DNA of 64,000 nucleotides from Asterias rubens. Taxonomy: Eukaryota. Location: contig NC_047075.1 of assembly GCF_902459465.1 (NCBI RefSeq), positions 9,486,001 to 9,550,000 on the forward strand, read 5' to 3'. A program made the translations under genes and the position numbers. The notes beneath the pieces were generated by a model, which worked only from the letters and a program-made list of their open reading frames with translations, ran no database searches and had not been told where the DNA came from. Below, piece by piece: positions 2,109-32,800 of this stretch (the first letter of the stretch is position 1; each line of letters starts with the position of its first letter).

Positions 2109-2422
2109 TGTAACGCTTCCCTAGTGTTACCTTTGTTCGATGGTGAAAGCTGGAATTATCAGGAGGACGGAGACAGAAGATACAGAACTAAAGATGATTT
2201 ATTTTGGGTTACTTCACCCCTTCAACATAAGTATATCAGGTTGCCATCTTGGCAAGTATCCCAGCAGCCCTCAGTCAAGGTCTGTCACATGTCCAAACTC
2301 TGTCACATGTCCAAGCTCTGTGTTTACGGTCACGTAGTTCATGTCAGGGTCAACAGGTCACTGTACCATGTATGTGTAGTCGATGTCAAGTCATGGTGTA
2401 TTTGGTATGTAATCCCGTTACA
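2109..2422 (-). repeat. 3' LTR (314 bp)
   Basis: Adjacent to the PPT; matches 7727-8041 except cagggtc vs cagaggtc. Confidence 0.95.
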
Positions 2423-2434
2423 CTCCCCTCCACT
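2423..2434 (-). promoter_or_regulatory. Polypurine tract
   Basis: Minus strand AGTGGAGGGGAG abuts the 3' LTR. Confidence 0.85.
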
Positions 2435-2855
2435 AGAAAAGGCATACATGTGGAGAATCTGTTTAAATCACATCAATATCAAATAGGCTTAACTCTCAAA
2501 CTTAAAGTTCTACTAAAAGTTTTCTCTTTTGTAGAGATCAATGTTGAAACAAAAATGTTACTCTCAATGTCCTCTCCAGTGAGTAGCAAAGTTCTATCCA
2601 TAGAAATCATACCACCACCAAAAAAACCCAAAAAACAAACAAGGCATATTTTTGCCGAGTGACAGTTCACAAACTGCTATCTTTTTTGTTTTAACAGGTT
2701 TCAGTTATGCTGCATTTTTCGTGTCTTCTCAAGGTTTTTTTTTGTTTTTTCTTTTTTTTCTCAAAAAAACTTGTTATTTGTATCCGGTCCGGCTGGGACA
2801 ACAACGGGTTAAAAAAAAACATTTTCTGATTTAGACAGTCTCTATCAGTTCTCAG

Positions 2856-5800
2856 TTAGGGTTCACATGACTTTGTCTGATCGATGTGTGCAATCACTTC
2901 CTTCTTGGCATTAGAGATCGCGGTTAGTTTATAGTTAACAGGAGTCAGGCGTTCAGTGACGGTGAATGGTCCACACCATCTTGGTGCAAGTTTCGCAGCA
3001 AAATGTTTCTTGGCATTTGACAGGGGGTGCGTTTTCAGCATCACTGTTTCTCCAATGTTCAATTCGGCGATGCGGCGTCCTTTGTCATAGAACTTTTTTC
3101 TTTTCTTCCTTGAGCGATCATTTTGTTCAGCTACTGTCTGGCTGAGTAGTCCAGGGTCCTCGGGGGGAGCACTGTCAATGTTGAGTTTGTTTGACAGTGG
3201 TGTGCGAAGTTTCCTTCCAGTCATCAAAATGCTTGGTGCTATGCCTGTTGTAGCATGTGCAACTGAGTTCATGGCAAATGCAAATTCTGCAACGTGGATA
3301 TCCCAAGTTCGGTGATCATCACCAACATAGGATTGCATCATAGCTTTGAGGTTACGGTTCACTCGTTCCACCCAATTTGTCTGAGGGTGATAAGGTGATA
3401 TGAAGACCTGTTCCACTCCCCACTCTACACAGACTGCTTCCATGGCCTTGCAGGTAAATTGAGAGCCGTTGTCTGACAGCAGTTTCCGTGGGGCACCGAA
3501 TCTACTGAACAATTGTCGAACGATCAGACAGGCGACTGCTATTCCAGTGGCTTTGCGGAGTGGAAACACTTCAACCCATTTAGTATAATGGTCAACTGCG
3601 ACAAGTAGATATTCATGTCCACCGTAACTCTTTGGAAGAGGTCCCATCAAATCCACACCAACAATCTCCCATGGGGTCTCAGAAGTGGTAGAAAGCATAA
3701 GCCCTGGTGGCTTACGAAATACTGGCTTGGTCTGCCTGCAAATTTTACATGCTCTCACAAAGCTTCGCACATCGATGGTTATTCCCTTCCACCATAGATG
3801 TAGATCATGAAGTCGGTGCAGGGTTTTGGTACGGCCAAGGTGACCAGCAGTAGGTTTTGAGTGACACGCCTGTAGAACAGTTTGTTTGAGAGATTGGGGT
3901 ATAACCAGCTTCCATTTCAATTTGTTGTAGTGATACAACACATCATCTTTGAGGCGGTACACAGGGGAATTCTGCACATTTTTTCTCAGTGCAGCCAGGG
4001 ATGGGTCTGCCACCTGTTGCATTTGTAGTTGTGCAAAATTTAGCATTGGGGTTGTTGCCTCATCTTGATTTTTGGCTCCTGTAGTTTGCCACTCAATTTC
4101 TCGTCTGGTTTTCCAACGCTTCTTTTTGCATGAGGGGCAGGAGTAAGAAGACATTTGCTGGGCGTGCTTCTTTTTGATATGTACACACAGTAGGTGATAC
4201 CATTGGTCACAACCATCACACTGGATCCAATTGACAGGATCAGTCTGAGGAAGTTCACAGCGTAGTGCGGCACAGCTTTCGTTGATGGTGTGGTCATTGG
4301 TAGCTGTGGTAGTTGAATTTACGTCATCGGTAGTTGTCTCATCTGGAGATGGTAGGCTTCGGACCACTCCTACGATTGCTTTTTCGTGGACTCGTGAGAG
4401 AGCATCTGGGACCAGGTGTTGGGCGCCGGGTCGGTAGGTAACATCGAAACAGAAATCCTGTAATCTTAACACCCATCGAGCAAACTTGCCTGTTAGATTT
4501 GCTTTTTTGAAAAGCCAGGTGAGGGCTTGGTGGTCTGTAACAACTTGGCACCGTTTTCCTTCAAGATACACTCTCCATTTCTCAAGGGCCCAAATCACAG
4601 CCAAACACTCTCGCTCGGTGGTGCTATAGTTCCTCTCACAAGTGTCAAGGGAACGGCTGGCGTAAGCTATTGTATGAAGCTCTCCATTTGTCTCCTGCAG
4701 AAGAACTGCCCCCAAACCGGTATTGCTAGCATCAGTGTGGACAACAAATGCTCTGCTTGGGTCTGGGTACGTCAGTACTGGTTCTGAAGTGAGAATTGAT
4801 TTCATCTCGATGAAAGATGAGTGACACTTGCTGGTCCATTCCCACTTCGCTGTTTTGTGTCGTAGTTGGTTCAGTGGGGCTGCGATGCTGGCCAGGTTTG
4901 GTATGAACTTTGAATACCAGGTTACCATGCCTAAGAACCTCTCAAGTTGCTTCAGATTCGTGGGGGTGGGGTAGTCAAAGATTCCTTGAACCTTCTCTGG
5001 GTCAGTTCGAATGCCATCAGTTCCAACTATATGACCAAGGTATTTCATGCTGCTGCAGCCGAAGTTACACTTTCCTTTATTAACTGTTAAGCCAGACTGC
5101 TGAAATCTCTGGAAAATTTGACGGAGACCAGCGTTGTGTTGTTCAGGTGTAGAGGAATAACACACAATGTCGTCAAGATAAACATAGCAGATCTTCCCAA
5201 TCAGGCCATGGAGAACAATTTCCATTAATCTTTGGAAACTTGCAGGTCCATTGACAACCCCAAAGGGCAGCACTGTAAACTGGAAAAGTCCTTCCTCGCA
5301 AATAAATGCCGTTTTCTCCTGGTCATCTGAGTGCATTTTCATTTGGTGATAACCACTCTTTAGATCAAGAGAACTGAAGACCTTTGCTCCATGTAGTGAC
5401 TCTATGATGGAGTCGATAGTTGGCATCGGGTAAGCATCAAGCTTTGTGACTTTATTTAGCTTTCTGTAATCGATGCATAGTCGGTAGTCGCTTTTCTCCT
5501 TCTTCGGGACCATTACCACAGGGGATGCCCATGGCGAAGAAGAGTGCTCAACTCTGCCATCAGCTAGCATTTCATCTAACTGTTTCCGTAGTGATTGACG
5601 GCGATCGTCGGAAAGACGGTAAACTGGACCACGGAGGGGTTGTGAATCTCCGGTGTTGATGCGGTGTTTTACAATATCTGTTCGCCCTGGCTTTTCAGTT
5701 ATCACATCAGGGAATTCGTGAAGCAGATTCTGTAGAAGAAGACTGTCAGAAGCAGTGGGGGCTTGGTCAACGTCACATGCAGTAGGGCCATCTTCCTCCT

Positions 5801-7445
5801 TCTGAGGGGGCTTATTGACTGGTAAGCCCATCATTGGCCACTTAATGCGGTGGTCACCAATGCCATCTTCCAACCAAAATGAGTTCATGTGAAAGTCCAT
5901 CACAAGGTTGATTTGCTTAGCAAAATCTCGCCCAAGTAATAGTGGAGTTGGCATACTGTTCATCAGCTGTAGGTGTATTTGTGTTTCTACACCAGCGACT
6001 TCAATTTTGGTCTGAATTTTCCCCACAGGTGAACATTTGGTTCCATCAACCATGTAGAGCACTGAGCTCGAAGACTCGGGTGTTGTTGCTAGTGATAAGG
6101 ATTGGCATAGTTCTTCTGTGATGAGAGAAACACAGGAACCGGTGTCTATCAGACCTATAACCTCACGGTCACCAATTGTCACAGTGATGTAAGGGCCATT
6201 GGTCCTGTGCTCTATGTCGGGGGCATCATCCAGGGAGTCATTCATCAAGAAATTTACTTGTGGCTTTGGTGGCTTTGTTGGCTCGGCAGCTTTGGTTGAG
6301 CCTTCACTAAACTTTGTTGTGAATGGTTTGGAGTCCACCTTTGGTTGATATTGTTTTGATTGTGCAGGTGGATAGGGGCACTCAGCAATTCGATGACCCA
6401 TTTCATGACATCTGTAGCAGACCGAGTCAAACTTTCCAATTGTTTTGGTCGGTGGGTGACCTTTTGCCAAGGATGATTTACCTTGATTGTTTGCTGATTT
6501 GAATTGGTCCTGACGTTCTTGTCTGTGATCTGATTGGTTGGGTCGAGGCCCGAAGGAGTGGGAGTTTTGGTGATTGAACTGTTGTGGCTTAAATGAAGTA
6601 GTGTTTTGATTGGATGACATCTTTCTGTTAAGGATGTGTTCATCAGCAGCTTTGGCTGTCGCCTGTGTTGTGGGTAATTTCTTCTCTCTCAGTTTAAGAC
6701 GGAGTCGTTCATCAGCCATGGAGTTGAGGAGTTGATCTGTCATGATAAGCTCTATTATTCTCTTAACATCATCTGATTTCAAGGATTCATCAGAAGGCTT
6801 GGCCCATCTTTTGAAGTAGAGCTCCAATCTTGTTGCAAACTCTTCAAAGGTTTCATCTGGATTTTTTGAAGCACTTTTGAACTTCAAGCGGTATGCTTCG
6901 GGTGTCAACTGGTAATGACGGAGAATAATGGCAACGATTTTGGTGTAATCTTGTTTATCTCCTTCGGTCAGTGCGTGGAAAGCTTTCTGTGCCTTACCGG
7001 TGAGGTAAGGTTCGAGTAGACGAGGCCACTCTTCTATCGGTCTCTTCTCTGCTGTGGCCATTCTTTCAAAAGTCGTCAAGTAACAGGTGATGTCATCGTC
7101 ACTCGACAGCTTATGAAAATCGGGCAATTCTGGGCCAAATCTAATCTTAGTGGGAGTTGTAGCCTTGGTAGCTTCAGTTACGGCCTTCAGGAGGGTTTGA
7201 CAGAGGACCTCAGTCTCCTGTTTACGATTTTCCTCCATCTTCAACAACAGTTGCGATACATCTATTTGTCCTGGCTGCTTTTGGGGCTGGTCAGGTTGGG
7301 GTTCCTTCATGTGGGGAAGGTCACAAAGGCATTGGATCCTTTCTTGCTTTGTCTTAATCTCATTTACATCTAAGTGGTTGAGCTGACATAGTTGGGCTAT
7401 GTATTCACCTGTGAAGCGACGTAGATATATCGCCCTCTCAGCCAT
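2856..7445 (-). CDS. Gag-Pol polyprotein (SCAN-like gag, CCHC knuckle, aspartic protease, RT, RNase H, PHD finger, integrase), 1529 aa from the first ATG
   Basis: Motifs CYRCHEMGHRIAEC (about 6378-6419), LIDTGS (about 6135-6152), YLDD (5169-5180), TDASNTGLGAVL, a C4HC3 finger (4128-4274), integrase HHCC (HSKPTAGH...CKIC) and D-D-E core (VDLMG, LLSDNG, VERVN); no internal stops. Confidence 0.95.
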   Translation of the reverse strand: MAERAIYLRRFTGEYIAQLCQLNHLDVNEIKTKQERIQCLCDLPHMKEPQPDQPQKQPGQIDVSQLLLKMEENRKQETEVLCQTLLKAVTEATKATTPTKIRFGPELPDFHKLSSDDDITCYLTTFERMATAEKRPIEEWPRLLEPYLTGKAQKAFHALTEGDKQDYTKIVAIILRHYQLTPEAYRLKFKSASKNPDETFEEFATRLELYFKRWAKPSDESLKSDDVKRIIELIMTDQLLNSMADERLRLKLREKKLPTTQATAKAADEHILNRKMSSNQNTTSFKPQQFNHQNSHSFGPRPNQSDHRQERQDQFKSANNQGKSSLAKGHPPTKTIGKFDSVCYRCHEMGHRIAECPYPPAQSKQYQPKVDSKPFTTKFSEGSTKAAEPTKPPKPQVNFLMNDSLDDAPDIEHRTNGPYITVTIGDREVIGLIDTGSCVSLITEELCQSLSLATTPESSSSVLYMVDGTKCSPVGKIQTKIEVAGVETQIHLQLMNSMPTPLLLGRDFAKQINLVMDFHMNSFWLEDGIGDHRIKWPMMGLPVNKPPQKEEDGPTACDVDQAPTASDSLLLQNLLHEFPDVITEKPGRTDIVKHRINTGDSQPLRGPVYRLSDDRRQSLRKQLDEMLADGRVEHSSSPWASPVVMVPKKEKSDYRLCIDYRKLNKVTKLDAYPMPTIDSIIESLHGAKVFSSLDLKSGYHQMKMHSDDQEKTAFICEEGLFQFTVLPFGVVNGPASFQRLMEIVLHGLIGKICYVYLDDIVCYSSTPEQHNAGLRQIFQRFQQSGLTVNKGKCNFGCSSMKYLGHIVGTDGIRTDPEKVQGIFDYPTPTNLKQLERFLGMVTWYSKFIPNLASIAAPLNQLRHKTAKWEWTSKCHSSFIEMKSILTSEPVLTYPDPSRAFVVHTDASNTGLGAVLLQETNGELHTIAYASRSLDTCERNYSTTERECLAVIWALEKWRVYLEGKRCQVVTDHQALTWLFKKANLTGKFARWVLRLQDFCFDVTYRPGAQHLVPDALSRVHEKAIVGVVRSLPSPDETTTDDVNSTTTATNDHTINESCAALRCELPQTDPVNWIQCDGCDQWYHLLCVHIKKKHAQQMSSYSCPSCKKKRWKTRREIEWQTTGAKNQDEATTPMLNFAQLQMQQVADPSLAALRKNVQNSPVYRLKDDVLYHYNKLKWKLVIPQSLKQTVLQACHSKPTAGHLGRTKTLHRLHDLHLWWKGITIDVRSFVRACKICRQTKPVFRKPPGLMLSTTSETPWEIVGVDLMGPLPKSYGGHEYLLVAVDHYTKWVEVFPLRKATGIAVACLIVRQLFSRFGAPRKLLSDNGSQFTCKAMEAVCVEWGVEQVFISPYHPQTNWVERVNRNLKAMMQSYVGDDHRTWDIHVAEFAFAMNSVAHATTGIAPSILMTGRKLRTPLSNKLNIDSAPPEDPGLLSQTVAEQNDRSRKKRKKFYDKGRRIAELNIGETVMLKTHPLSNAKKHFAAKLAPRWCGPFTVTERLTPVNYKLTAISNAKKEVIAHIDQTKSCEP

Positions 7446-7707
7446 TGTTGACTTCAAAATTCAGCAAAACGTTTTTTTCATGCAATAGGTGCAGTTCATA
7501 CATCCATCTGTGGTTTGGTCACTAATTAACAGGATTCTCTTTAGGATATTGATAATTAAATCAACTATGAAGGTATCATAATGTTCATGATATTTTTTTT
7601 AGACTTTAAGTTTCAGTACTCACTCAGCTGCATGATCGGTTTCATGGTTTCACAGCATCATCTTATTCATCGTCAAAATCCACCAAAATCATCCAGTCTA
7701 AACAGCC

Positions 7708-7725
7708 ATCCTGCCGACTACGCCA
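7708..7725 (-). promoter_or_regulatory. Primer binding site complementary to tRNA-Ser 3' end
   Basis: Plus strand ATCCTGCCGACTACGCCA equals the 3' 18 nt of metazoan tRNA-Ser(AGA) including CCA; 1 nt from the 5' LTR. Confidence 0.9.
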
Positions 7726-7726
7726 T

Positions 7727-8041
7727 TGTAACGCTTCCCTAGTGTTACCTTTGTTCGATGGTGAAAGCTGGAATTATCAGGAGGACGGAGACAGAAGATA
7801 CAGAACTAAAGATGATTTATTTTGGGTTACTTCACCCCTTCAACATAAGTATATCAGGTTGCCATCTTGGCAAGTATCCCAGCAGCCCTCAGTCAAGGTC
7901 TGTCACATGTCCAAACTCTGTCACATGTCCAAGCTCTGTGTTTACGGTCACGTAGTTCATGTCAGAGGTCAACAGGTCACTGTACCATGTATGTGTAGTC
8001 GATGTCAAGTCATGGTGTATTTGGTATGTAATCCCGTTACA
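7727..8041 (-). repeat. 5' LTR (315 bp)
   Basis: Adjacent to the PBS; contains an 18-bp tandem duplication tctgtcacatgtccaa(a/g)c. Confidence 0.95.
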
Positions 8042-9634
8042 AGCTAAACATCAATGTCACCATGGACAAGTTATTTTTTCGTTGTCTTCAGCATGGTGAC
8101 TTAATTGAGAAATTCCCACAAACGGGATCCATTTAAAGTGCTGGTTTATTAGTGTCACATAACTGACGTTGATAAAGAATCGTTGATAGCTTACCACCAG
8201 GTTTCTTGAAGGCTGAAGAGGAGGTTGTTTTAGCAGACGACCCAGTGCAGAGCCATGAGAGTGTCCATTATCCCGCACACGTGTAAAACCACAACACAAG
8301 TTAAACACACGCTTCGTGCTGAAAAGAGCAATGGTCGCATTTGGCTACAACAACGCGCAAACGTGATTTGCATAATATAACAAAGAGATTTGTATTACAG
8401 TTTGACAAGTCTTCGTTGAAAGAATGCATAGTCTAGACTTTGCTTTTTTTATAGAAACTTCTGCAGGGGCATAACAGCTATATTTATTCACTTTTTAAAT
8501 TGTTTATGCTTTTTTTCTTCTCATAAAGTTGGAGTTGCTGATTCGAAGATTCCGCTTGTAAACTTATTTTAATAAACTTTGTATTCATCTATGCAATCAT
8601 TTAAAGACACTGGACATTATTGGTAGGCCCCCTGATTGTCAAAGACCAAGCTTCTAACTTAGTGTATCTCAACATAATGCACAAAATAACAAATGATACT
8701 TGAGCTTGGTCGCGAGATATGAAAGAAAAAACACGCTTGTCACACGAAGTTGTGTGCTTTTAGATGCTTGATTTCGAAACCTCCCAAAATCTAATTCTTA
8801 GGTCTCGAAACTGTCAAATTCGTGGGAAATTACTTCTTTCTTGAAAACTATGTTACTTCAGAGGGGCCGTTTCTCACTGAAACAATAAAATACTTCAACC
8901 AGATGTCTTGTATTCCTATCTGAAAGCACGCAAATTAGTCCAACAAGGGTGTTTTTTCTCTCTCTCGCAACTTTGATGACCAATAGCTCAAATAATGTTC
9001 ACAGGCTTGTTATTTTATGCTTTGATGTTGGGATACACCAAGTGAGAAAACTGGTGTTTGACAAAAACCAATCGTGTACCTTCCTTTTTAACCCAAGAAG
9101 GGTCTGTGAATTTTAAAACAATTCAAGACAGTTGCTTGCCCATTTCCTTCACTTTCAACCAAATCTTTAGGTGAAAATATATGGAGTTATTGTATGTCGT
9201 AATAAGCTTGTCGTATTGTTTTAACCGTCTGCCACTTCCAATACTAAAACAAAAAACGGGCAAACTATGTTTTGTTGTAAGGGCCTAGGCCCATTCATTA
9301 ATATAAACAAAATGGCGGCAAGTTTCGGCAACTATTTTGCAACCGGTTCATTCAGTCCAGCCCATCCGAAAGACCAGTTTATATCTGAAAGACAGACTCA
9401 TACAATCATCTAGAGAAGGGAATCATGTTTATAACAAATTAATTTATGAATCTACAGGTAGTTGGGTGGTAAAGGTCCAACTCCATAAAACACTGACTTT
9501 TCCATACCATAGCTTCCTGTATAAAGTATTCCACTTTCAAATATTTGAAGCACTGTATATCCATGCCATTGTGTCATGTGTAAAGTATGGACCAAAGGTT
9601 CAGTAAGTATAAAATGCGCAATATCCTGGGGGGA

Positions 9635-9706
9635 CCCACCATGGTGTAGTGGTAGGGTGTCGGACTCCGAAGCCAATAGTCCCTGGTTCGTGCCACGGTG
9701 GTGGCA
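9635..9706 (+). mobile_element. tRNA-related SINE head or tRNA pseudogene
   Basis: A-box-like TGGTGTAGTGG, B-box-like GGTTCGTGCC, CCACCA/TGGTGG stem; T and anticodon arms are imperfect. Duplicate at 60442-60513. Confidence 0.5.
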
Positions 9707-10589
9707 GTGCGGTGAGTGGCCGGCCGCTAAGTCTCGACTCACCGCGCAGTGGCACTCAAATGTCCGTTTAATTTAATTTTATTTTGTGTTGTTCGTTCAT
9801 TTAAAGTTGTTCATTATACCATGGAGGAATACTTGGGCTTAAAAATAAACTTGAACGCAATTTAAGTATTAGGAGCAGCTTACACCCAAAATAAATGGGT
9901 TCGAGTTGCGTTTTTTTTTTTACTACGTTTATGAAATTGAAAGAAAAGACACCCCTGTCAAACGAAGTTGTGTGCGTTTGGATGGTTGATTTCGAGACCT
10001 CAAATTCTAAACTTGAGGTCTCGAAATCAAATTTGTGGAAAATTACTTCTTGCTCGAAAACTGCGTCACTTCAGAGGGAGTCGTTTCTCACAATGTTTTA
10101 TACTACCAACCTCTCCCCAATATTCGTTACCAAGTAAGGTTTTATGCCGATAATTATTTTCAGTAATTACCAATAGTGTCCACTGCCTTTAAAAACATAA
10201 TTATTTAAATATGCAGAAAAAAAAATAAAAACAAAAAATACATTGTGAATACATTCTCCTGTGCTTTTCAGAAACATTCGCGAAAAGCCCATGTCATCAT
10301 CGCACATGTGACGTAATTGGGTGGGAGCTCCTTTTTGTTTTCGCCGCTTTGAGCAATTTTTGAGTGCGAACGTTGACTACTGACCAGTAACGTACATGCC
10401 CAGTGATCTACTCACTCGAACGACTCATTTGAAAGTCTAGTCAACCATCGGGAACACTCCGTCATACACCTTTCCGCAATAATTACTCGAACGCCAGCGT
10501 AAAGCTAAGATTTAGGTGCACTGTGGTCTAGCTGGTGATCAAAACAGGAGCGTCAAACATCATGGCAGTAAATACATGGCAAAATACTG

Positions 10590-10737
10590 GGTGCGTTCGT
10601 TTAGCTTCCCTGGGTCGACCCCGGTGTGTGACGAGGTTTTTTTCTGGGACGAACGTGTGCAGATAATTACCCACGTTCGTCCTGGAAAAAACCCGCCACA
10701 CACCGGGGTCGACCCAGGGAAGCTGAACGAACGCACC
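10590..10737. mobile_element. Hairpin MITE (148 bp near-perfect foldback)
   Basis: Arms ggtgcgttcgtttagcttccctgggtcgaccccggtgtgtg... and its reverse complement; duplicate at 61382-61529. Confidence 0.8.
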
Positions 10738-12620
10738 GAATGTATGATACAAATCAAAATGACAAGGGTAATTTGATCCATGGCTATCCCACAACTCATT
10801 CAACAGTTTGCGCTTGCGCAAATGGTATGCGAAAAGTATGGCTTTAGCCGTGGTGTCACTGGTGCCCTCTGCGCTTTACGCGTGTTACCAAGGAACAGGC
10901 TACCAGGACCACGGAATGAACAATGGTCTTGGCATGGGTCCAACGGTCCAATGGTCAACCAGCCTGGGATCGAATAAAAATAGTCCACCTTTTATAAGTA
11001 GGATTTGAAACACGATATGGAAATAAAGTTGATACACGATATGGAAATAAGGTTTACGGTAACACCATGCAATGAATATCTCTAAATGAGTTGGGTTCTG
11101 AAAAAAAAACACGTTCGTTTCAAGTCGACGTTTGTATTTGCACACATTTATTTCATTGCTGCCCTACATTTAAACTTACACATTTTACAAAGTTTTATAA
11201 ATATATTCAAATTATGAGTAGTTTACAGTATTACTTAGTATCTTAGGATATGAAAGTTTACAATGATTTAGATAGTTATATATTAGGAAGCTTTTAAAGT
11301 AGGACAACAATTAGGTTAGGGTGAAGCAGAGGCTTTTGTGCCTTAACCTATGGACAGACAAACAACATAAAATACTATACGAAAGAAAGAAAACACAAGA
11401 CAGACTAGACAAACAGAAATACACGACAGAGGCTAATATTTGATGGTGAGTAAGTTAACAATATACTTAAATAAACCTATGAATAAGCATCAAGAAGTTT
11501 TTTTTTGTTTTTTTTCTTGTGAATGCAGGAAGAGTGATTGAAGATTTAATTGAGTTAACTCAAATTATTCCAAGACATAACGCCACGTTTCGATCAGTAT
11601 GCTCCAAACATAGTGCACGCTCAAACTTGCTCTAATTTGTTGCAACACACAAAGCATCGTCCCTTGACGTCAACGTATTATCAAATTAACGTGCGTCATC
11701 AGCGGCAGAAGTGTTTCTAGTTTTTTTGTTTGGCTGTTTTTCTCTCTCGATAACTACAAGCAGTTTCCAAAAGTATAAATAATATCAAAATTACATGAAA
11801 AAAAAAAAGAAAAAAAAATCATAAACAAGTTTGGGGGCTGTCAGGTTAAACATCGCTCATGTAACTTAATTATAGCTGTCTTGAATATATACATATAAAA
11901 ATAGTTCTTTAAAAATTATTTTAAATCAAACTTTTTGAATCGGTAAAAGTAAGACTTTCCGAGGTAATATAGCTTGTCTATGTTTATGAATCAATAATAT
12001 GTTTATAATACTTCAATCTTTTCATCGTGTTAATTTTTTGTATTTAAGATTATTATAATCATTCAACAACTTAATATATATATTTTTCGAATTCTATAAT
12101 TGCATCAATAAATCTGTGATTAATAATTCGCTTTAAAAATGTAATTTTATTTGAATTGTTTTATTAAAGGGACACATTGCCTTGGATCGGTTAAGTTGGT
12201 CTATGGAAAGGTTTTGAAACCAATTGTTATAACATGGATATGATTAGAAAGTTGTTTTAAAAGCATAATATAATGATCCACACAAATATGCCTCGAAATT
12301 GCATGGTTTTCTTTTTACGTCTTTTAAAACCAGGACTTGAATGCGGCCGGTCAGAAACACAGAGTTTGAGTCCAGTGGTCTTCATGGCTCGGCTAAGACA
12401 ACTCACAATATTTAAATCTGCATATTTGCGTCTGTTTCATTGTGTCTCATAGAGTGATAATTCTACTAGTTATATTTTACATTTTTACATACATTTTGTT
12501 CAATAGATTTTTTGTAATTATAAGTGTATGTACATTTTTGCAAAATGAAAATAATTATATAATAATATGTTTAAAACTTCAAAATTTCACAATTTAAAAC
12601 ATGATACCTTGGCTATTTAA

Positions 12621-26800: not shown

Positions 26801-29800
26801 CAGCACATAGTCTTCCACACCTTGGGACTGTCCGCTGGCCTTCTTGAAGGTCCCATGACCATTAGCGGTCTGTGCTTAAGCCAGCACCGCTCACTGCGCG
26901 TAGTTTAGCAATGAAACTCGGCTTGTGTTTGTCCGTTTGCCCGTTTGCCGTTCCCAAGGCTGTTGGAGTGCTAGAAGAGCGGAAGTTCGCTCCCAGGCAA
27001 CCCCGCTTTCGGCAACCAAGCTAGGGCTGGACACTGTTTTGATTGTATAGCAACATCTCTTTGGGATCTTCTACTGAACGTCCTATAGCCTAGGCCAAAC
27101 GATATAAAAGGGGACTTCTGGAACACTCTGTTTTTTTTTTTTTTTTTTTTTTTTTTTTGGGGGGGGGGGGTATAATCAATTGCAGCACATAGTCCAGCGG
27201 GACTTCTGGAACACTTATGTTGATTGATTAATACTGGGGCGACCGGAATATGAACTGCTGCCTCGTTTCGGGTACCGTAACTATCTCTCGAAACCTACTC
27301 TCTAGAAGATACCCACAACAAATCGAAACAAATCGTCACCGTAAAGCTCTTTGGATTTCTAGAAACTACCCGGCCCTTGTTGCTCGAACAAACAAAACAG
27401 CACAGCTCCTTTTTTTATTTCCTTAAACGCACGAACTAAAAAACACAGTTTTTGCATTTCTCGAAGCCACCATCGTTCCGCTACATTGAACTCTCTTTGG
27501 GCTGTTGCACCAGAAACGTGGCAAAAACATTGTAGGCCCTCTTTATCTTCGTATATGCGTACGAGACAATACTTCTTTGGACATATCATCTCGATTTTCT
27601 AGTTCTTGGTCGTATGCATGTTGGCTAGATAGCAAAATAAACTTCTCGAAAGGAAAACTAGTCGGTCCTCCTTGCATGTACTCGAGCTGCATCGCTTTTA
27701 GTTGCCAGCGATTATATATCTAGTTGGGAAATCGAATCTAGCTTGTGTGGAAAATAACACTTTTCCGTCGCAGAGAAGGCAGACATCCAAATATCTAGGA
27801 GCACCTAGAAGAAAGGAGGTAGAACACCAAGCCTGTGGAGTATTTCTAACAAGAGATCAAGCGCCATGGAGGTGTCGAAGCCCAGATGCCGCTTCTTTGC
27901 AAGCTAGGAGCTATTCGAACTACTCCGAGCAAAAAGAAAGATAGCGTAACTTCTATTGAATACCGGCGTACCGTGCGTAGGATACACAGCAACTCCGTGA
28001 TCGGTGCAGAGCATCCCTTATATCCTAGATACGAAACTGCTTACATATTTCCTTTCTGGCCTCCCGTATTCTCTATCTGCATTAGCTCCAGAAATATGTC
28101 CCACGATAGTTGAACGGCATATCGGCCCACCCTTCGTCGTACTCGTAGGCTTCCAGGCACGTAGGCACCCAGGTGCAGACGTGGTTCCTTACCGAGCCAG
28201 TGTTGTCGAGGATGGTGGAAAGTTGCTTCTACTGCCATTGCTGCGACTCTCTTTCTCTAGTAGCAGTGTTGTGTGTTCCACCGAAATTGCCTACGACATA
28301 GCGTTGCTAGCGGCCACCCCAGTGGTTTCAGCTAGGGATATTCGATAGCGGCTACAAGACGTACTATAGTGTTCGAGCAACTAGGAATGCCCCATTCTTC
28401 GCTTCCCTACCCGGTTCCTAGCTCCTAGCTACTATTTGGGGCTGGCTCGTAGCGGCTATACTATACAGCTTTTTCGCTTCCCTGCCCAAACTCCATTCCT
28501 AGCTTCTATTTGCTCTTCCAGCTGCTATTTGCTCTTCCAGCTGCTATTTTTTGACTGCTGCCCGTTCCCCAGTTCCTCGCTTCTATTTGCTCTTCCTGCT
28601 ACTATTTTGGGCTCCAACACCCCATACATCGCTCCCCTGCCCAAACTCCGTTCTTAGCCTTTGTTCGCTCTTCTAGCTGTGTTGTTTGGGTCGGCTGTGA
28701 GATGCGTTTGAGTAACTAGGATCGCCCCATTCGAGCTGTTTTGGGTAGCTTCTAAAGTGTAGGTTTCTAGATATCCAAAATGGAACTGTGCTATTGGTTC
28801 GGCTACGAGGTGTACTGTACCGTTCGAGCAACTAGAGGTGACCCATTCGAGGTGGCTTCTAGAAATCCAAACACTGTGTTGTTTAGCTCGTGCGTTCGAG
28901 CAACTACGGGCCGGGTAGCTTCTGAGAAACTAGGATCGGTTAGCTTTTAGAAATCCAAAAAGAGCTGTGCGGCTACGAGATGTACTAAAGCGTTCGAGCA
29001 ACTAGGGGTGCCCCATTCGAGTTGTTTTGAGTAGCTTCTAGAGGGTAGGTTTCGAAAGATAGTTTTGGCAGCCGAAACGAGGCAGCACTTACTTTTTCGG
29101 TCGCCCCAATGAAGCGCAGATAATGGTCCTGGGACCTGCAAGGAGGCAAACGGACAGCCCCAAGATGTGGAAGACAATGTGCTGTATTTGTATAATTTTT
29201 TATACCCCCCCCCCGCCAAAAAAAAAAAAAACATAAAACAAACAAAACATACAAAACCAAAAGTGTACCAGAAGTCCCCTTTCTCAATGCCTTTCTCTTA
29301 CTACTGTTGGCAATATTTTTGTGGAAAACTAAAACACGGTCACCCAGCAATAAGTAAACTTGTGTTTTTCTAGTCCATAGCATTTGGAAAGTAGAACGGG
29401 AGTCATGGGATAATAATACGATTTTAGATTAAAACATGCAAACAACCTACACAACTTGCCCCCTATGTTTGTTATTGTTGAAATTCTGTCTACGTATTCA
29501 AACATATGTGATGAAATGACAATGGAAAGTTTTATTGAGTTGTATTTGGTTATGCATGGTGGGAGTATGAGATTTACGGTGGTAGCGGCTTGTGTAAAAC
29601 TCTTACGAGTATAGTGTATGTTCTAAAAAGAACCACGTTAATGTAGGGTAATAAATAAGCATAATTATTGTACAGTTGATACAAATTTGAGTTTACTATC
29701 TCAATAAAGTTTTAGTCATTCTTCATTCTTTATTATATTATCAAAACATTGATAGTAATACCTTTTCTATCAATTGAAACACCAACCCATGACGAGCATT

Positions 29801-32800
29801 ACACTTCTGTGTCATTGGCGCTGTAAAACCTCATCTCTCACGGTATGTCAGGTTCCATCATTCAACTCAATATCCAAAAGTGAAGATTTAAACCCACACA
29901 TTCCGATGATTTTAATTTCTTCTGTTTCAGATTACTGTGGTTCATCAAACGTATTAGTTGGAACAGCTCCAGTCAATCTGACATCACCAGGCTATCCAGG
30001 AGTCTATCCTAACTCAGTAGATTGCCAGTGGGAGATCAGGGCTCCAGACTGGTTATATGTGGTGGTGTCCATACAAGATTTATACACAGAGGAGGGATAT
30101 GACTTTGTTTACATTAATGGCACCCTTCTTGATGGACACACCGCGTCAATAGAACTAAACGGAATCACACAACTAAAGTCCATTGCATTTACCTCTTTGA
30201 CGACAACTTATATCCGCTTCGCAGCTGACGATATTGTTTCAGAAAGGGGTTTTCTTCTACAACTTCAAGGCACCAATAATTGTAATACCACGGATTTCAA
30301 CAGAAACATTACAATTTATTGATCGAAATAGTTTATTGTTTGGGAATTTATCTCAGATGCAATTATTTCCAATCGTCAATTAAACACTTCTTAAAAAAAC
30401 AATAATTCGACATGCCTTTCGAGAATGACTTGAGCTGCTTCAAACAAACCTAAAAAACCTTGGAGGAAGATTTAAACCCAAGATTTAATGACTTACGTTC
30501 CCGAATGAACGTACAAGGAAGGACAACAATTAAATTTGTGGTCAACAAGGAAAAATAATTTTCGCCTCCAATATTGAAACACTTTATCGCCGCCGTTTCC
30601 ACAAAATTATGACTGTGTTATAACAAACAAATAATTATGTGTGTGGAGTTTAATTGTTTCTTTTTTGAAACTGCTGTTTCGGAGATGAACAATTATTTGT
30701 TAAAGAAATTATTACCCTTTTAATGAGCTAAAGCATTTTTTTCAACCGTTGTCTGAATGGTAAAAAAGGGGAAAAGAGACGTGCCTGCGCTTTACAGTTT
30801 GTCAAGCAAAGCATTTTACTATAACTTAAAGAATTTATCACCTCGTTAAATAAAGTCACACCTGTATTTGTTCATAGCTGGGTACTAATGTATAAACCAA
30901 CTACTGAAAATCAAATAATTAATCGGTCACGCGCACTAGTGTATTAACGATACTATGGAGCGTTACGTCCCGTTTCCATCAAAGAAACTGTAAACAAATA
31001 GATTAACATATTTTGATTTTGTTTGTTAGACGACGTTGTCGTTTCGTGAAATGGTGACGACATTTCACATTATGGTCTCTGTAATAGCTACAATTTCCTA
31101 CCACTTGTTCGACGAAGTTGTCATTTCGTGAGATGGTGACGACATTTCACATTTTGGTCTTTGTATAAATAGATACAAGTTCCTGCCACTTGGAGGATGA
31201 TCTCGACTGTAGGAATGGGATATGCGTCGCTGCACAAGCAAGGTGTGACGGTAATCTTGACTGCCGATTCGGTCCAGAAGACTATTCATATGTGGATGAA
31301 GAGGATTGTGGTGAGGACCATAGCATTAATGTTGGTGTTATTGTCGCCCTTGTAGCTGTAATTGTTGTTTTTGCTGTTGGTGTTGGTTTCGGTTATGATA
31401 TCGTTGTAGTTTTTGTTAACCTTATTGTCGTTGTCGTTGCCCTGTCGTTGGCGTCGCCGTTTGATTTGTCTTTTTGATTTGGGCCGTTAATACCTCTAAA
31501 TGATGGTTTTCCAATTCATATTTGCAACATGCAGTCAGGGTGAGTACACATCCGCATCTGGTTTGAAATGCCTGGAGAATTATACGAAGGTTCGCTATGT
31601 GGTTAAGGTTTTTCCTTATGGCGAAAATGATGAAATTTACTAGTCAAAAATTGTAGAAAGCCCAACAGCCGAATGAAGATCGAAGACAAGAAAAAAGACG
31701 CGCACGGCCTCCAAGAAACAAAGCCTCCGAAAGACTCGAAAAAAGTAGTTGACATGCCCGAAGGTGAGTAAAACTGCTCTTTCTTTGCTACAACCACGTA
31801 CCGAGGTGTGGATAGAACGATTCTATTTCTGGTAGATCCGAATGCAGGAGAAGAGCAACCGGTCCAGGAATATTTCCTCCAGCGAGAAGTCGAGCGAGAC
31901 TGTAAGAGCTTTGCAAGCTAGCAACTCATCTCCTCTGCAAACTAGGAGGTGCTCGAACAACTCCGCGAAAGAGGAAAGATATGCTTTTTTATCGGGGTAC
32001 CGTAAACATGGCGAAACACCATTGACTATTGTAGAGAAAGGTATAGAACCTAGCTCCTGCACAGAATAGGACGAGCGCTTCCTCCCCTAGAACACAGAAA
32101 GCCACGGCCTCATTACAAAACTACCAGGCAAGACCCCCATCGTTCCGCTACATTGCACTCTCTTCGGGCGGTTGCACCAGAAACGTTGCAAAATATAGCC
32201 TAGGCCAAACGATATAAAAGGGGACTCTGTTTTTTTTTTTTTTTTTTTTTTTGGGGGGGGGGTATAATCAAATGCAGCAGATAGTCCTCCGGGACTTCTG
32301 GAACACTTATGTTGATTGATTAATACTGGGGCGACCGGAAAATGAACTGTTGCATCGTTTCGGCTACCGTAACTATCTCTCGAAACCTACTCTCTAGAAG
32401 ATACCCAAAACAACTCGAATTATGGCACCCTAGTAGCTCGAACGCTATAGTAAATCTCGTCACCGTAAAGCTCTTTTTGGATTTCTAGAAGCTACCCGGC
32501 CTTTGTTGCTCGAACAAACCAAACAGCACATCTCCTTTTTTTATTTGCTCAAACGCACGAACTAAAAAACACAGTTTTTGGATTTCTCGAAGCCACCATC
32601 GTTCCGCTACATTGAACTCTCTTTGGGCTGTTGCACCAGAAACGTGGCAAAAACATTGTAGGCCCTCTTTATCTTTGTATATGCGTACGAGACAATACTT
32701 CTTTGGACATATCATCTCGATTTTCTAGTTCTTGGTCGTATGCGTTTTGGCTAGATAGCAAAACAAACTTCTCGAAAGGAAAACTAGGCGGTCCTCCTTG

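What the first reader, a model, noticed from the sequence alone, without database searches (positions are those of the whole stretch)
4128..4274. PHD finger inserted between RNase H and integrase in an intact Gypsy polyprotein
Seen: a complete C4-H-C3 finger (CAALRC-ELPQTDPVN-WIQCDGC-DQWYHLLC-VHIKKKHAQQMSSYS-CPSC) in frame, flanked by T/D-rich and basic linkers. Established: Gypsy pol normally runs RT-RH-IN, and chromatin readers in Gypsy are usually C-terminal chromodomains (chromoviruses). WIQC and WYH align with aromatic-cage positions of H3K4me3-binding PHDs such as BPTF (YIGC, WYH), although the aromatic before the first Cys is missing. Inference: the domain may stay attached to the integrase N-terminus and steer insertion by histone mark. 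I do not know a characterised LTR element with a PHD at this position.
Basis: partly seen in the sequence, partly recalled or inferred. Interest (0 to 1): 0.78.

Follow-up and report, generated by a model that had tools for sequence, protein, structure and literature searches.

The report
Histone-reader finger inside a sea-star retrotransposon
A young, uninterrupted Gypsy-type jumping gene in a sea-star genome carries, just before its integrase, a zinc finger very like the one human KDM5 proteins use to read the "active promoter" histone mark. A whole echinoderm lineage of such elements has kept it, so it probably helps choose where new copies land, though nobody has tested that.

Summary
Window 4128-4274(-) encodes a complete C4HC3 PHD finger (Pfam PF00628, 29-36 bits against a cut-off of 24). 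It sits between RNase H and integrase in one uninterrupted 1529-aa gag-pol ORF. The ORF is flanked by 314/315-bp LTRs that differ by a single indel, with a tRNA-Ser primer site.

The finger is not a private oddity. All 11 closest relatives (33-56% identity over the RH-tail-to-integrase stretch; named hosts Patiria and Strongylocentrotus) carry it at the same place. All eight zinc ligands and the second cage Trp are invariant; the first cage Trp is kept in 11 of 12. The flanking linkers are scrambled. On an RT-RH-IN tree these elements form one clade.

The finger most resembles KDM5A/B PHD3, an H3K4me3 reader whose cage is just two Trp.

Targeting of integration to H3K4me3 chromatin is plausible but untested. 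The only binding evidence is a weak predicted H3-tail docking.

The novelty claim is weakened. PHD-retrotransposon fusions have been surveyed, and the active Chlamydomonas Gypsy-7a_cRei is published with domains listed RH, PHD, INT. I found no description of this echinoderm, KDM5-type lineage.

Verdict: a new variant of a known kind, of moderate interest.

The parts
7727..8041 (-). 5' LTR (315 bp, TGTAAC...GTTACA)
   Evidence: Direct repeat with 2109-2422; the two differ only by a 1-nt indel.
7708..7725 (-). Primer-binding site TGGCGTAGTCGGCAGGAT, one base after the 5' LTR
   Evidence: Its complement lies at the 3' end of host tRNA-Ser(AGA) genes. The same PBS occurs in the relatives' loci L044 and L060.
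2856..7445 (-). Single gag-pol ORF, 1529 aa from the first ATG, stop codon included
   Evidence: Catalytic motifs are visible in the translation: protease DTGS, RT YLDD, RNase H DAS, integrase HHCC and D,D,E.
6633..6902 (-). Gag capsid C-terminal region, SCAN-like
   Evidence: PF02023, 26.3 bits, E 6.5e-6, just under the cut-off of 27. Relatives have precomputed SCAN hits.
6375..6422 (-). Gag CCHC zinc knuckle
   Evidence: PF00098, 18.2 bits, below the cut-off; the motif CYRCHEMGHRIAEC is visible.
5916..6188 (-). Aspartic protease
   Evidence: PF13975 / PF13650 / PF00077.
5025..5510 (-). Reverse transcriptase
   Evidence: PF00078, 136 bits.
4452..4838 (-). RNase H
   Evidence: PF17917 / PF17919.
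4275..4391 (-). Linker 1: T/D-rich, variable, predicted disordered
   Evidence: Mean pairwise identity 0.13 among 12 clade members. pLDDT below 50.
4128..4274 (-). PHD finger of KDM5-PHD3/BPTF type. Zn ligands C1062, C1067, C1080, C1083, H1088, C1091, C1107, C1110; cage Trp W1077 and W1086 (numbering from the TTG at 7457).
4083..4127 (-). Basic helix continuing from the finger (KKKRWKTRREIEWQ)
   Evidence: Predicted helix 130-147 of model m298e053490d0. The KKxRW...W pattern is shared by the closest relatives.
3723..4046 (-). Integrase N-terminal extension-like module plus the HHCC zinc domain
   Evidence: PF17921. pLDDT 90-95 from about residue 1138. Best fold matches are the Ty3 and PFV intasome integrases, though weakly (E 1.7e-3 and 2.6e-3, above the 0.001 line).
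3384..3659 (-). Integrase catalytic core (rve)
   Evidence: PF00665, 60 bits.
2877..3053 (-). Integrase C-terminal SH3 / GPY-F module; no chromodomain
   Evidence: PF24626 and PF22938 match; PF00385 does not match at E<=0.1.
2423..2433 (-). Polypurine tract (GTGGAGGGGAG) abutting the 3' LTR
   Evidence: alignment.
2109..2422 (-). 3' LTR (314 bp)

Best explanation
This is a recently inserted, uninterrupted Ty3/Gypsy LTR retrotransposon of a sea star. It belongs to an echinoderm-associated clade whose Pol acquired a PHD finger once, in the flexible RNase H-integrase linker, and has kept it.

The finger belongs to the KDM5-PHD3/BPTF subclass of methyl-lysine readers. It has the same C-x4-C start as KDM5 PHD3 and both tryptophans that alone form the KDM5A PHD3 cage for H3K4me3.

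Most likely mechanism (inferred, not shown):
- The protease cuts in the long disordered linker upstream of the finger.
- The finger plus its basic helix therefore becomes the extreme N-terminus of integrase.
- There it tethers the intasome to nucleosomes carrying H3K4me3/me2, that is, to active promoters and 5' ends of genes.
- This would bias or stimulate integration, much as chromodomains do for chromoviruses and as the RAG2 PHD does for RAG recombinase.

What is shown: domain identity, position, conservation, clade structure, and similarity to KDM5 PHD3.
What is inferred: the cleavage site, the histone ligand, and any effect on target choice.
For: Domain and position:
- Pfam PHD scores above its cut-off, inside an uninterrupted gag-PR-RT-RH-PHD-IN frame.

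Selection:
- All 11 relatives keep the finger at the same place. All eight Zn ligands and the WYH Trp are invariant; the WIQC Trp is kept in 11 of 12.
- Mean pairwise identity is 0.47 in the finger, 0.13 and 0.17 in the two linkers, and 0.53 in the integrase N-terminal domain.

Single origin:
- On an RT-RH+IN tree built without the PHD columns, the 12 elements form one clade (SH-aLRT 95). Its sister is a PHD-less group (99).

Reader type:
- A profile of the 12 fingers hits KDM5B PHD3 (2ma5, 3e-15) and KDM5A PHD3 (2kgg, 1.5e-14) over the full length, including 'CAAxxC..P...VDWVQCD'. BPTF follows at 1.6e-14.
- The AF2 model (pLDDT 80) matches BPTF and KDM5A PHD3, including H3K4me3-bound entries.
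- The KDM5A PHD3 cage is only Trp18 and Trp28 (PMC9814790). These align with W1077 and W1086.
- In the window's own genome, the best host match to the finger's first half is the PHD3 exon of the KDM5 gene, which lies downstream of its PLU-1 exons.

Geometry:
- AF2 predicts about 47 disordered residues between RNase H and the finger. Only about 15 separate it from a confidently folded module that matches, though weakly (Foldseek E 1.7e-3 and 2.6e-3), the Ty3 and PFV integrase N-termini.
- The Ty3 integrase N-terminal extended domain is a known host-factor and LTR contact site (10.1101/2021.07.27.453949).

Docking:
- The finger plus 2 Zn plus this genome's H3 residues 1-40 got 'weak support', score 0.38 against a best control of 0.12.
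- That mark was reached by 51 of 78 solved complexes and 2 of 108 mismatches. At 0.60 or under it was reached by only 5 of the 78 solved complexes, and by all 4 mismatches that passed.
- The runs agree in at least 91% of contacts, and partner pLDDT is at least 52. Similar complexes are already solved, so the pass may only reflect likeness.

Independent recurrence:
- Another Gypsy lineage carries a different (C-x2-C) PHD at the same junction.
Against: - No binding data, no cleavage-site data and no insertion-site data exist.
- The window's genome holds a single full copy, so no preference can be read from it.
- This copy lies in AT-rich, apparently gene-poor DNA. The nearest recognisable exon is about 22 kb away.
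- The few relatives' loci examined show no annotated neighbouring genes. That does not look promoter-proximal, although surviving copies are filtered by selection.
- Similarity to KDM5 PHD3 is only 13-22 identities in 35-49 aligned columns against the host's own KDM5, and BPTF scores almost equally. Descent from KDM5 specifically is therefore not established.
- One relative (P0005) has Leu in place of the first cage Trp.
- The docking result is weak and may come from model memory.
Confidence: 0.5

Rival explanations
1. The finger binds chromatin but does not pick sites. It stays on RT-RNase H, or on an uncleaved RT-RH-IN species, and only helps nuclear or chromatin retention of the pre-integration complex (for example through mitosis). 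It would give no detectable H3K4me3 bias.
For: Both linkers are predicted disordered, so a cut on either side is possible. A basic, NLS-like stretch follows the finger. The surviving copies examined are not obviously next to genes.
Against: The tether to the integrase module is much shorter and more conserved than the one to RNase H. Known reader domains on integrases do bias target choice: the chromodomain case is cited, and the Ty3 case.
Confidence: 0.2
2. The finger reads something other than H3K4me3: unmodified or differently modified H3, another histone, or a non-histone host protein. PHF2's PHD, for example, binds a VRK1 peptide.
For: The C-x4-C loop and the lack of a third or fourth cage aromatic leave specificity open. 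PHD fingers of this fold bind varied ligands: the hits include H4 and VRK1 complexes and H3K27me3-bound EBS/SHL. The docking support is only weak and is blind to methylation.
Against: Both tryptophans that are sufficient for the KDM5A PHD3 cage are conserved, along with the CD acidic residue after the first one. The best sequence and fold neighbours are almost all H3K4me3/me2 readers.
Confidence: 0.15
3. The finger serves the element's own expression rather than integration. As a KDM5-PHD3 look-alike it could occupy H3K4me3 at the element's promoter or elsewhere and interfere with host KDM5 recruitment and silencing.
For: The only support is the resemblance to KDM5 PHD3.
Against: It is embedded in Pol next to integrase, not in a separate regulatory protein. 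Pol is made in small amounts and is packaged. There is no precedent in the papers read.
Confidence: 0.05
4. The finger is a passenger with no present function, carried along since a single ancient capture.
For: One relative has lost a cage Trp (P0005). The family is at very low copy number here.
Against: The eight ligands are invariant and finger identity is 0.47, against 0.13-0.17 in the linkers. This holds across relatives whose RT-RH+IN core has branch lengths up to about 1 substitution per site. A neutral 49-aa insert would not survive that.
Confidence: 0.05

Closest known systems
KDM5A/JARID1A and KDM5B PHD3 (PDB 2KGG/2KGI/3GL6, 2MA5), an H3K4me3 reader with a two-Trp cage
   Same: Same unusual C-x4-C first ligand pair and the same 'CAAxxC..P...VDW[IV]QCD..C..W[YF]H..CV' pattern. 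Both cage Trp are present. These are the best profile hits (3e-15 and 1.5e-14) and are among the best fold hits.
   Different: Here the finger is part of a retrotransposon Pol, not a demethylase. It has one residue fewer between the two Trp (BPTF-like spacing). It is only about 37-45% identical to the host's own KDM5 PHD3, which is split by an intron while the element's finger is continuous. Ligand binding has not been tested.
Chlamydomonas reinhardtii Gypsy-7a_cRei (Craig et al. 2022, PMC9940879)
   Same: A Gypsy LTR element whose Gag-Pol is published with the domain list GAG, PROT, RT, RH, PHD, INT. It is active, with 86 new insertions in one laboratory strain. Intergenic insertions were 2.6x more frequent than expected, and the authors suggest the PHD may guide insertion.
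   Different: It is a green-alga element, 15.4 kb, with two ORFs. I could not obtain its sequence, so the PHD type and any relationship are untested. The window's clade is animal (echinoderm), about 5.9 kb, with a single ORF.
Chromoviruses (MAGGY, Tf1 and others): Gypsy integrases with a C-terminal chromodomain
   Same: A histone-mark reader fused to a Gypsy integrase. Targeting to marked chromatin has been demonstrated (Gao et al. 2008, as cited).
   Different: Here it is a PHD at the N-terminal side, of an H3K4me3-reader type. No chromodomain is present.
RAG2 / RAG2-like C-terminal PHD with the RAG1 recombinase
   Same: A transposase-type DDE enzyme coupled to an H3K4me-reading PHD. This genome's own RAG2-like gene (Kelch plus PHD, next to a RAG1 homologue) has a C-x4-C finger with TWIQCDKCKKWYH. 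That the RAG2 PHD reads H3K4me3 and stimulates cleavage is from my own knowledge (Matthews et al. 2007).
   Different: There the PHD is on a separate accessory protein, and the system is a DNA transposon or recombinase, not an LTR retrotransposon.
Other PHD-bearing transposable elements: CR1-like LINEs, Chlamys PLEs, Ginger1, cnidarian PYGO-like PHD retrotransposons, REM1
   Same: PHD is a recurrent accessory domain of TEs.
   Different: They differ in element class, in domain position (ORF1, inside RT or EN, transposase C-terminus, or a separate ORF) and in PHD subfamily. None is functionally characterised.

Membership tests
Ty3/Gypsy (Metaviridae) LTR retrotransposon | Pol domain order PR-RT-RH-IN, with Gypsy-type RT, RNase H and integrase | tested here: met
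   The Pfam order is given. The element falls among Gypsy polyproteins.
Ty3/Gypsy (Metaviridae) LTR retrotransposon | Two LTRs with TG...CA ends, a PBS after the 5' LTR and a PPT before the 3' LTR | tested here: met
   The PBS matches the host tRNA-Ser(AGA) 3' end.
Ty3/Gypsy (Metaviridae) LTR retrotransposon | Target-site duplication of 4-6 bp | tested here: inconclusive
   In element orientation the junctions read ...TAGCT|TGTAAC...GTTACA|GCTGAT. That gives only a 3-bp GCT repeat, or AGCT if the last LTR base is counted. The Patiria relative L060 has a clean 4-bp CAGT.
PHD finger (PF00628) | C4HC3 ligand pattern and a Pfam score above the gathering cut-off | tested here: met
   29.4 bits in the whole protein and 35.6 bits in the fragment, against a cut-off of 24. 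Ligands are invariant in 12 sequences.
PHD finger (PF00628) | PHD fold | tested here: met
   AF2 pLDDT 80. Foldseek top hits are all PHD fingers, with TM 0.66-0.70. This is a prediction only.
H3K4me3-reading PHD subclass (KDM5 PHD3 / BPTF type) | Aromatic cage residues at the two Trp positions | tested here: met
   W1077 and W1086 align with KDM5A Trp18 and Trp28. They are conserved in 11 of 12 and 12 of 12 relatives.
H3K4me3-reading PHD subclass (KDM5 PHD3 / BPTF type) | Binding of the H3 N-terminal tail with a preference for K4me3 | not testable with these tools
   The only result is a methylation-blind docking: weak support, 0.38 against a best control of 0.12.
Chromovirus | Chromodomain at the integrase C-terminus | tested here: not met
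   No PF00385 hit at E<=0.1. The C-terminus has only SH3_Tf2-1 and Integrase_p58_C.
Echinoderm RH-PHD-IN Gypsy clade (P0001-P0011) | Groups with these elements on an RT-RH+IN tree and shares the finger at the same alignment position | tested here: met
   Clade support is SH-aLRT 95, and 99 for the inner 10. The 18-nt PBS is shared with L044 and L060.
Chlamydomonas Gypsy-7a_cRei-like elements | Sequence relationship of Pol and of the PHD | not tested
   Only the published domain list was available. No sequence was in reach.

The most novel reading that the evidence does not exclude
An animal LTR-retrotransposon lineage captured the H3K4me3-reading PHD3 of the host demethylase KDM5 and fused it to the N-terminus of its integrase. 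That would make it a natural H3K4me3-directed integrase that homes to active promoters. It would be the euchromatic mirror image of chromoviruses and a retroelement parallel to RAG2-guided RAG1.
Probability: 0.3. Interest if true: 0.75.

Novelty: new variant of a known kind. Interest (0 to 1): 0.5.

Why it matters
How LTR elements choose their targets is known in molecular detail for only a handful of cases: Ty1, Ty3, Ty5, Tf1, the chromoviruses, and the retroviral LEDGF and BET tethers. TE-borne PHD fingers have been listed many times, but in the papers I read none had been tested for function.

This clade offers a clean test case. It has a small, well-folded reader whose closest solved relatives have a defined two-Trp H3K4me3 cage. 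It sits at a defined place next to integrase. It has been conserved through deep divergence. It occurs in echinoderms, for which embryo chromatin maps and population resequencing are feasible.

It would also give a natural model for promoter-directed integrases. If it does not, the strong conservation of the finger needs another explanation.

Tried and rejected
- **Reads.** I therefore have no expression, polymorphism or variant data.
- **Sequencing runs.** The look-up of sequencing runs shows 31-mers of the internal region in runs of four coded organisms and two marine metagenomes, none on record as RNA. Without reads I cannot separate other species from low coverage.
- **TSD.** No clean 4-bp duplication for this copy.
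- **Insertion context.** The flanks of this copy and of five relatives' loci show nothing that tests promoter proximity.
- **P0006-family LTR ends.** The ends in L057-L059 are noisy (low-coverage long-read contigs), so I drew no TSD from them.
- **L003.** This was the only other own-genome match spanning the whole query. It has RNase H and integrase but no PHD.
- **Host-exon chimera.** Rejected, because the frame is continuous and relatives share the finger.
- **Literature.** Searches for a described RH-PHD-IN animal Gypsy clade, or for Gmr30/SCAN links, found nothing specific. The REM1 paper (PMC1291216) is not held.
- **Alignment.** One MAFFT run timed out and was replaced by a segment-wise alignment.
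- **Costly profile search.** Not used, because the claim does not rest on absence of relatives.
Full report
**1. The observation**

The plus strand of that stretch has stops. The peptide lies inside one long open frame, 2856-7457(-). The first ATG is at 7445, in a CAACAATGG context, which gives 1529 aa.

Pfam finds these domains, in order:
- a SCAN-like gag capsid region (26.3 bits, just under the cut-off) and a CCHC knuckle;
- an aspartic protease, RVT_1 and RNase H;
- PHD (PF00628, residues 1068-1110, 29.4 bits, E 8e-7, cut-off 24);
- Integrase_H2C2, rve, and SH3_Tf2-1 / Integrase_p58_C.

Scanned alone, the region around the finger scores 35.6 bits, E 9.6e-9. The catalytic motifs of protease, RT, RNase H and integrase can be read in the translation. 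There is no chromodomain.

**2. The element**

Direct repeats at 2109-2422 and 7727-8041 are the LTRs (314 and 315 bp, TGTAAC...GTTACA). They differ by one indel and no substitution.

One base after the 5' LTR lies TGGCGTAGTCGGCAGGAT. Its complement occurs at the 3' end of tRNA-Ser(AGA) genes of the same genome. A polypurine tract, GGAGGGGAG, abuts the 3' LTR.

The target-site duplication is unclear. Only GCT is repeated, or AGCT if the last LTR base is counted.

In the 417.6-Mb assembly this is the only full-length copy. A few partial LTR-like fragments, at 66-97% identity, lie elsewhere. The family is therefore old in the genome but at very low copy number, and this insertion is young.

Earlier notes of this scan call the genome a sea star. 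The nearest named relatives are from Patiria miniata, which agrees with that.

**3. Relatives**

I ran a word search with residues 940-1260, scored against whole polyproteins. It returned ten proteins at 41-59% identity that cover the whole stretch and all carry PF00628 (P0001-P0010). An eleventh, P0011, has a finger that falls just under the Pfam cut-off (22.2 bits).
- Two are Patiria miniata proteins annotated 'uncharacterized'.
- The 90% cluster of P0008 contains a Strongylocentrotus protein.
- The hosts of the rest are unknown: ENA or Logan assemblies, and one metagenome.

In the alignment, all eleven have the finger at the same place between the RNase H end motif (PDALSR) and the integrase.
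- All eight ligands are invariant: C-x4-C-x12(14)-C-x2-C-x4-H-x2-C-x15-C-x2-C.
- The Trp of WYH/WFH is invariant.
- The Trp of WIQC is kept in 11 of 12; P0005 has Leu.

Mean pairwise identity is 0.47 in the finger, 0.13 and 0.17 in the two linkers, 0.53 in the integrase N-terminal part and 0.68 in the RNase H tail. That contrast shows purifying selection on the finger itself.

The elements around P0001 (L044) and P0003 (L060, Patiria) share the same 18-nt PBS. L060 has identical LTRs and a clean 4-bp duplication, CAGT. One protein of the P0006 family is encoded identically on three contigs of one assembly, so that family has been recently active.

**4. One gain, kept**

I built a quick maximum-likelihood tree (LG+G4, SH-aLRT only) on the RT-RH and integrase-core columns, leaving out the finger and the linkers.
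- The 12 finger-bearing elements fall on one side of a branch (support 95; 99 for the inner ten).
- Their sister is a group of six PHD-less Gypsy polyproteins (support 99).
- End branches of the two outliers, P0010 and P0011, are 0.8-1.0 substitutions per site. The finger has therefore survived deep divergence.

Caveats: this is a quick search, and the sample is drawn from one word search.

**5. What kind of PHD**

A profile of the twelve fingers was searched against all PDB sequences.
- The best hits are KDM5B PHD3 (2ma5, E 3e-15) and KDM5A/JARID1A PHD3 (2kgg and others, 1.5e-14), aligned over the full length.
- BPTF follows (1.6e-14), aligned only from the second Cys onward.
- After that come ALFIN, PHF2/8, CFP1, Spp1, DIDO and TAF3, most of them solved in complex with H3K4me3/me2 peptides.

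The KDM5 fingers share the odd C-x4-C start and the string CAAxxC..P...VDW[IV]QCD..C..W[YF]H.

The AF2 model of the finger (pLDDT 80) matches the BPTF and KDM5A PHD3 structures.

[quoted passage not shown] In the alignment these are the partners of W1077 and W1086 of the element.

Within the window's own genome, the best host match to the finger's first half is an exon reading CSAKHCLQPTGDDISWVQCDKCQKWYHLLCIG. It lies about 4 kb downstream of the PLU-1 exons of the KDM5 gene on the same strand. The rest of that host finger follows after an intron of about 370 nt with GT...AG ends.

The element's finger has no intron. It is 13-22 identities in 35-49 aligned columns from the host's. Capture from a KDM5 mRNA is therefore a reasonable inference, but it is not established, because BPTF-type fingers score nearly as well.

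**6. Where the finger sits in the protein**

I made an AF2 model of the segment from the RNase H tail to the HHCC domain, using the 12-sequence alignment. It gives:
- pLDDT below 50 for about 47 residues upstream of the finger;
- 78-90 for the finger;
- a helix that continues from its last zinc knuckle through the basic KKKRWKTRREIEWQ;
- only about 15 low-confidence residues after that;
- then pLDDT 90-95 for two helices, a small sheet and the HHCC helices.

The best fold matches of this model are the integrase chains of the Ty3 intasome (7q5b) and the PFV intasome (3oy9). The E-values are weak, 1.7e-3 and 2.6e-3. Both of those integrases have an N-terminal extension before the HHCC domain. 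In Ty3 that extension contacts the LTR and has been reported to touch TFIIIC.

In other Gypsy families of this genome, the same RNase H-to-integrase interval is 76-121 aa, against 138-156 aa here (coordinates). The finger is thus an insert into a naturally long, loose linker.

This geometry favours the finger travelling with integrase, but it does not prove it.

**7. Binding test in silico**

I folded the finger with two zinc ions and residues 1-40 of this genome's own histone H3. The result was 'weak support':
- score 0.38, best control 0.12;
- the mark was reached by 51 of 78 solved complexes and 2 of 108 mismatched pairs;
- at 0.60 or under it was reached by only 5 of those 78 solved complexes, and by all 4 mismatches that passed;
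- the runs agree in at least 91% of contacts, and partner pLDDT is at least 52.

Because PHD-H3 complexes are already solved, the pass may only reflect likeness. The test is also blind to methylation.

**8. What is already known**

PHD fingers are a recurrent accessory domain of transposable elements:
- CR1-like LINEs and REM1 (cited in PMC6673714);
- Ginger1 transposases (PMC2836005);

A survey of 172 genomes found 823 gene models that join chromatin and TE domains, mostly PHD and Chromo. They include cnidarian retrotransposons with PYGO-like PHDs (10.1101/2021.11.30.470311).

Most directly, the Chlamydomonas v6 genome paper shows the active element Gypsy-7a_cRei with the domain list GAG, PROT, RT, RH, PHD, INT. 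It reports 86 new insertions in one strain, with intergenic insertions 2.6x more frequent than expected. The authors suggest the PHD may help avoid deleterious insertions (PMC9940879).

In my own search, three further Gypsy polyproteins (P0079, P0084, P0091) have a canonical C-x2-C finger without cage Trp at the same RH-IN junction. Two of them also carry DNA methyltransferase-like domains. They lie elsewhere on the tree.

The junction is therefore a repeated landing place for PHD fingers, and the architecture as such is not new. I did not find any description of the echinoderm clade, of a KDM5-PHD3-type finger in an LTR element, or of any functional test of a TE-borne PHD.

**9. Mechanism and rivals**

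My best reading, at about 0.5, is this. The finger is the N-terminal appendage of integrase. It tethers the intasome to H3K4me3/me2 nucleosomes and so biases or stimulates integration at active promoters.

The working analogues are:
- chromodomain-guided chromoviruses;
- LEDGF- and BET-tethered retroviruses;
- the RAG2 PHD, which couples RAG1 to H3K4me3 (this last from my own knowledge).

This genome's own RAG2-like gene has a similar C-x4-C, TWIQCD...WYH finger next to a RAG1 homologue.

The rivals are:
- a chromatin or nuclear tether with no site bias, or a finger that stays on RT-RNase H (0.2);
- a different ligand (0.15);
- a role in the element's own expression, by competing with KDM5 (0.05);
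- a functionless passenger (0.05, contradicted by the conservation).

Evidence that does not favour promoter targeting:
- the single copy here sits in AT-rich DNA, with the nearest recognisable exon about 22 kb away;
- the relatives' loci show no annotated neighbours.

Survivorship bias makes this weak evidence either way.

**10. Limits and conduct**

Because this is a provirus-like element of an animal, I only compared and described copies. I name no copy as suited for mobilisation. The mobilisation assay is listed under referred steps.

**Verdict**

The finding is a new variant of a known kind, with interest 0.5.

Noticed in passing
L052 = G000:C12:11104965-11108078 (ORFs L052:757-1620(+) and L052:2417-3103(-)): A Kelch beta-propeller ORF ends in a PHD finger (PCDFIPC...TWIQCDKCKKWYHTHC...FFCFSCKK*). 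It lies convergent with an ORF that matches RAG1 (PF12940, 101.5 bits). This looks like the sea star's RAG1-like/RAG2-like pair, and its PHD also has a C-x4-C start.
   Followed up: partly
window 6633-6902 (-): The gag capsid C-terminal region matches the SCAN domain (PF02023, 26.3 bits against a cut-off of 27). Several relatives and another PHD-less Gypsy group (P0085, P0100, P0103) also hit SCAN. This fits the idea, from my own knowledge, that SCAN derives from a Gypsy gag.
   Followed up: partly
P0079, P0084, P0091 (proteins): These Gypsy polyproteins carry a canonical C-x2-C PHD without cage Trp between RNase H and integrase. P0084 also has a cytosine-5 DNA methyltransferase domain above cut-off; P0079 has a Dam-like domain (PF05869) and only a sub-threshold methyltransferase hit. 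Hosts are unknown. They represent a separate gain of a PHD at the same junction.
   Followed up: partly
G000:C2:14054616-14062524 (-), locus L048: This is the host KDM5 gene. PLU-1 exons are followed by a PHD3 exon, CSAKHC...WYHLLCIG, which is split from ...MTQEPGDDEEFICRPC by an intron of about 370 nt with GT...AG ends.
   Followed up: yes
L046/L047 = G000:C7:12983225-12983845 (+): Two adjacent exons encode BPTF-like fingers (FYIGCDRCNDWFHGRCVNI... and FYIGCDMCQNWFHGACVNI...). This is probably the host BPTF/NURF301 gene with tandem C-terminal PHDs.
   Followed up: no
window 8720-8783 and 9938-10001: A 64-nt direct repeat at 88% identity lies just outside the element. It is probably a small interspersed repeat.
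   Followed up: no
window 29774-30319 (+): An ORF with a CUB domain (PF00431, E 1.5e-10). It is the nearest recognisable coding exon to the element, about 22 kb away.
   Followed up: no
L070:6272-7033 (+), contig of P0010: The most divergent clade member with a Pfam-significant finger has an extra 253-aa ORF downstream of pol, with no Pfam hit on record. It could be a third ORF (env-like or other).
   Followed up: no
L060:6143-7765 and 7791-10751 (Patiria miniata, JADOBP010000017.1): The Patiria relative has 100% identical 259-bp LTRs and a 4-bp CAGT duplication. Its coding region is in two ORFs in different frames. The public gene model covers only the RT-to-integrase part.
   Followed up: partly
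window 2423-7726: 31-mers of the internal region occur in public runs of four coded organisms and two marine metagenomes, from nine studies. Shares are 0.32-0.81 outside the source sample. None is on record as RNA. Whether these are other species or low-coverage samples of the same species could not be settled.
   Followed up: partly
G000:C13:15151568-15151791, C8:20300497-20300686, C21:3020352-3020631: Partial LTR-like fragments of the same family at 95%, 91% and 73% identity. They are older remnants, in contrast with the single young full copy.
   Followed up: no
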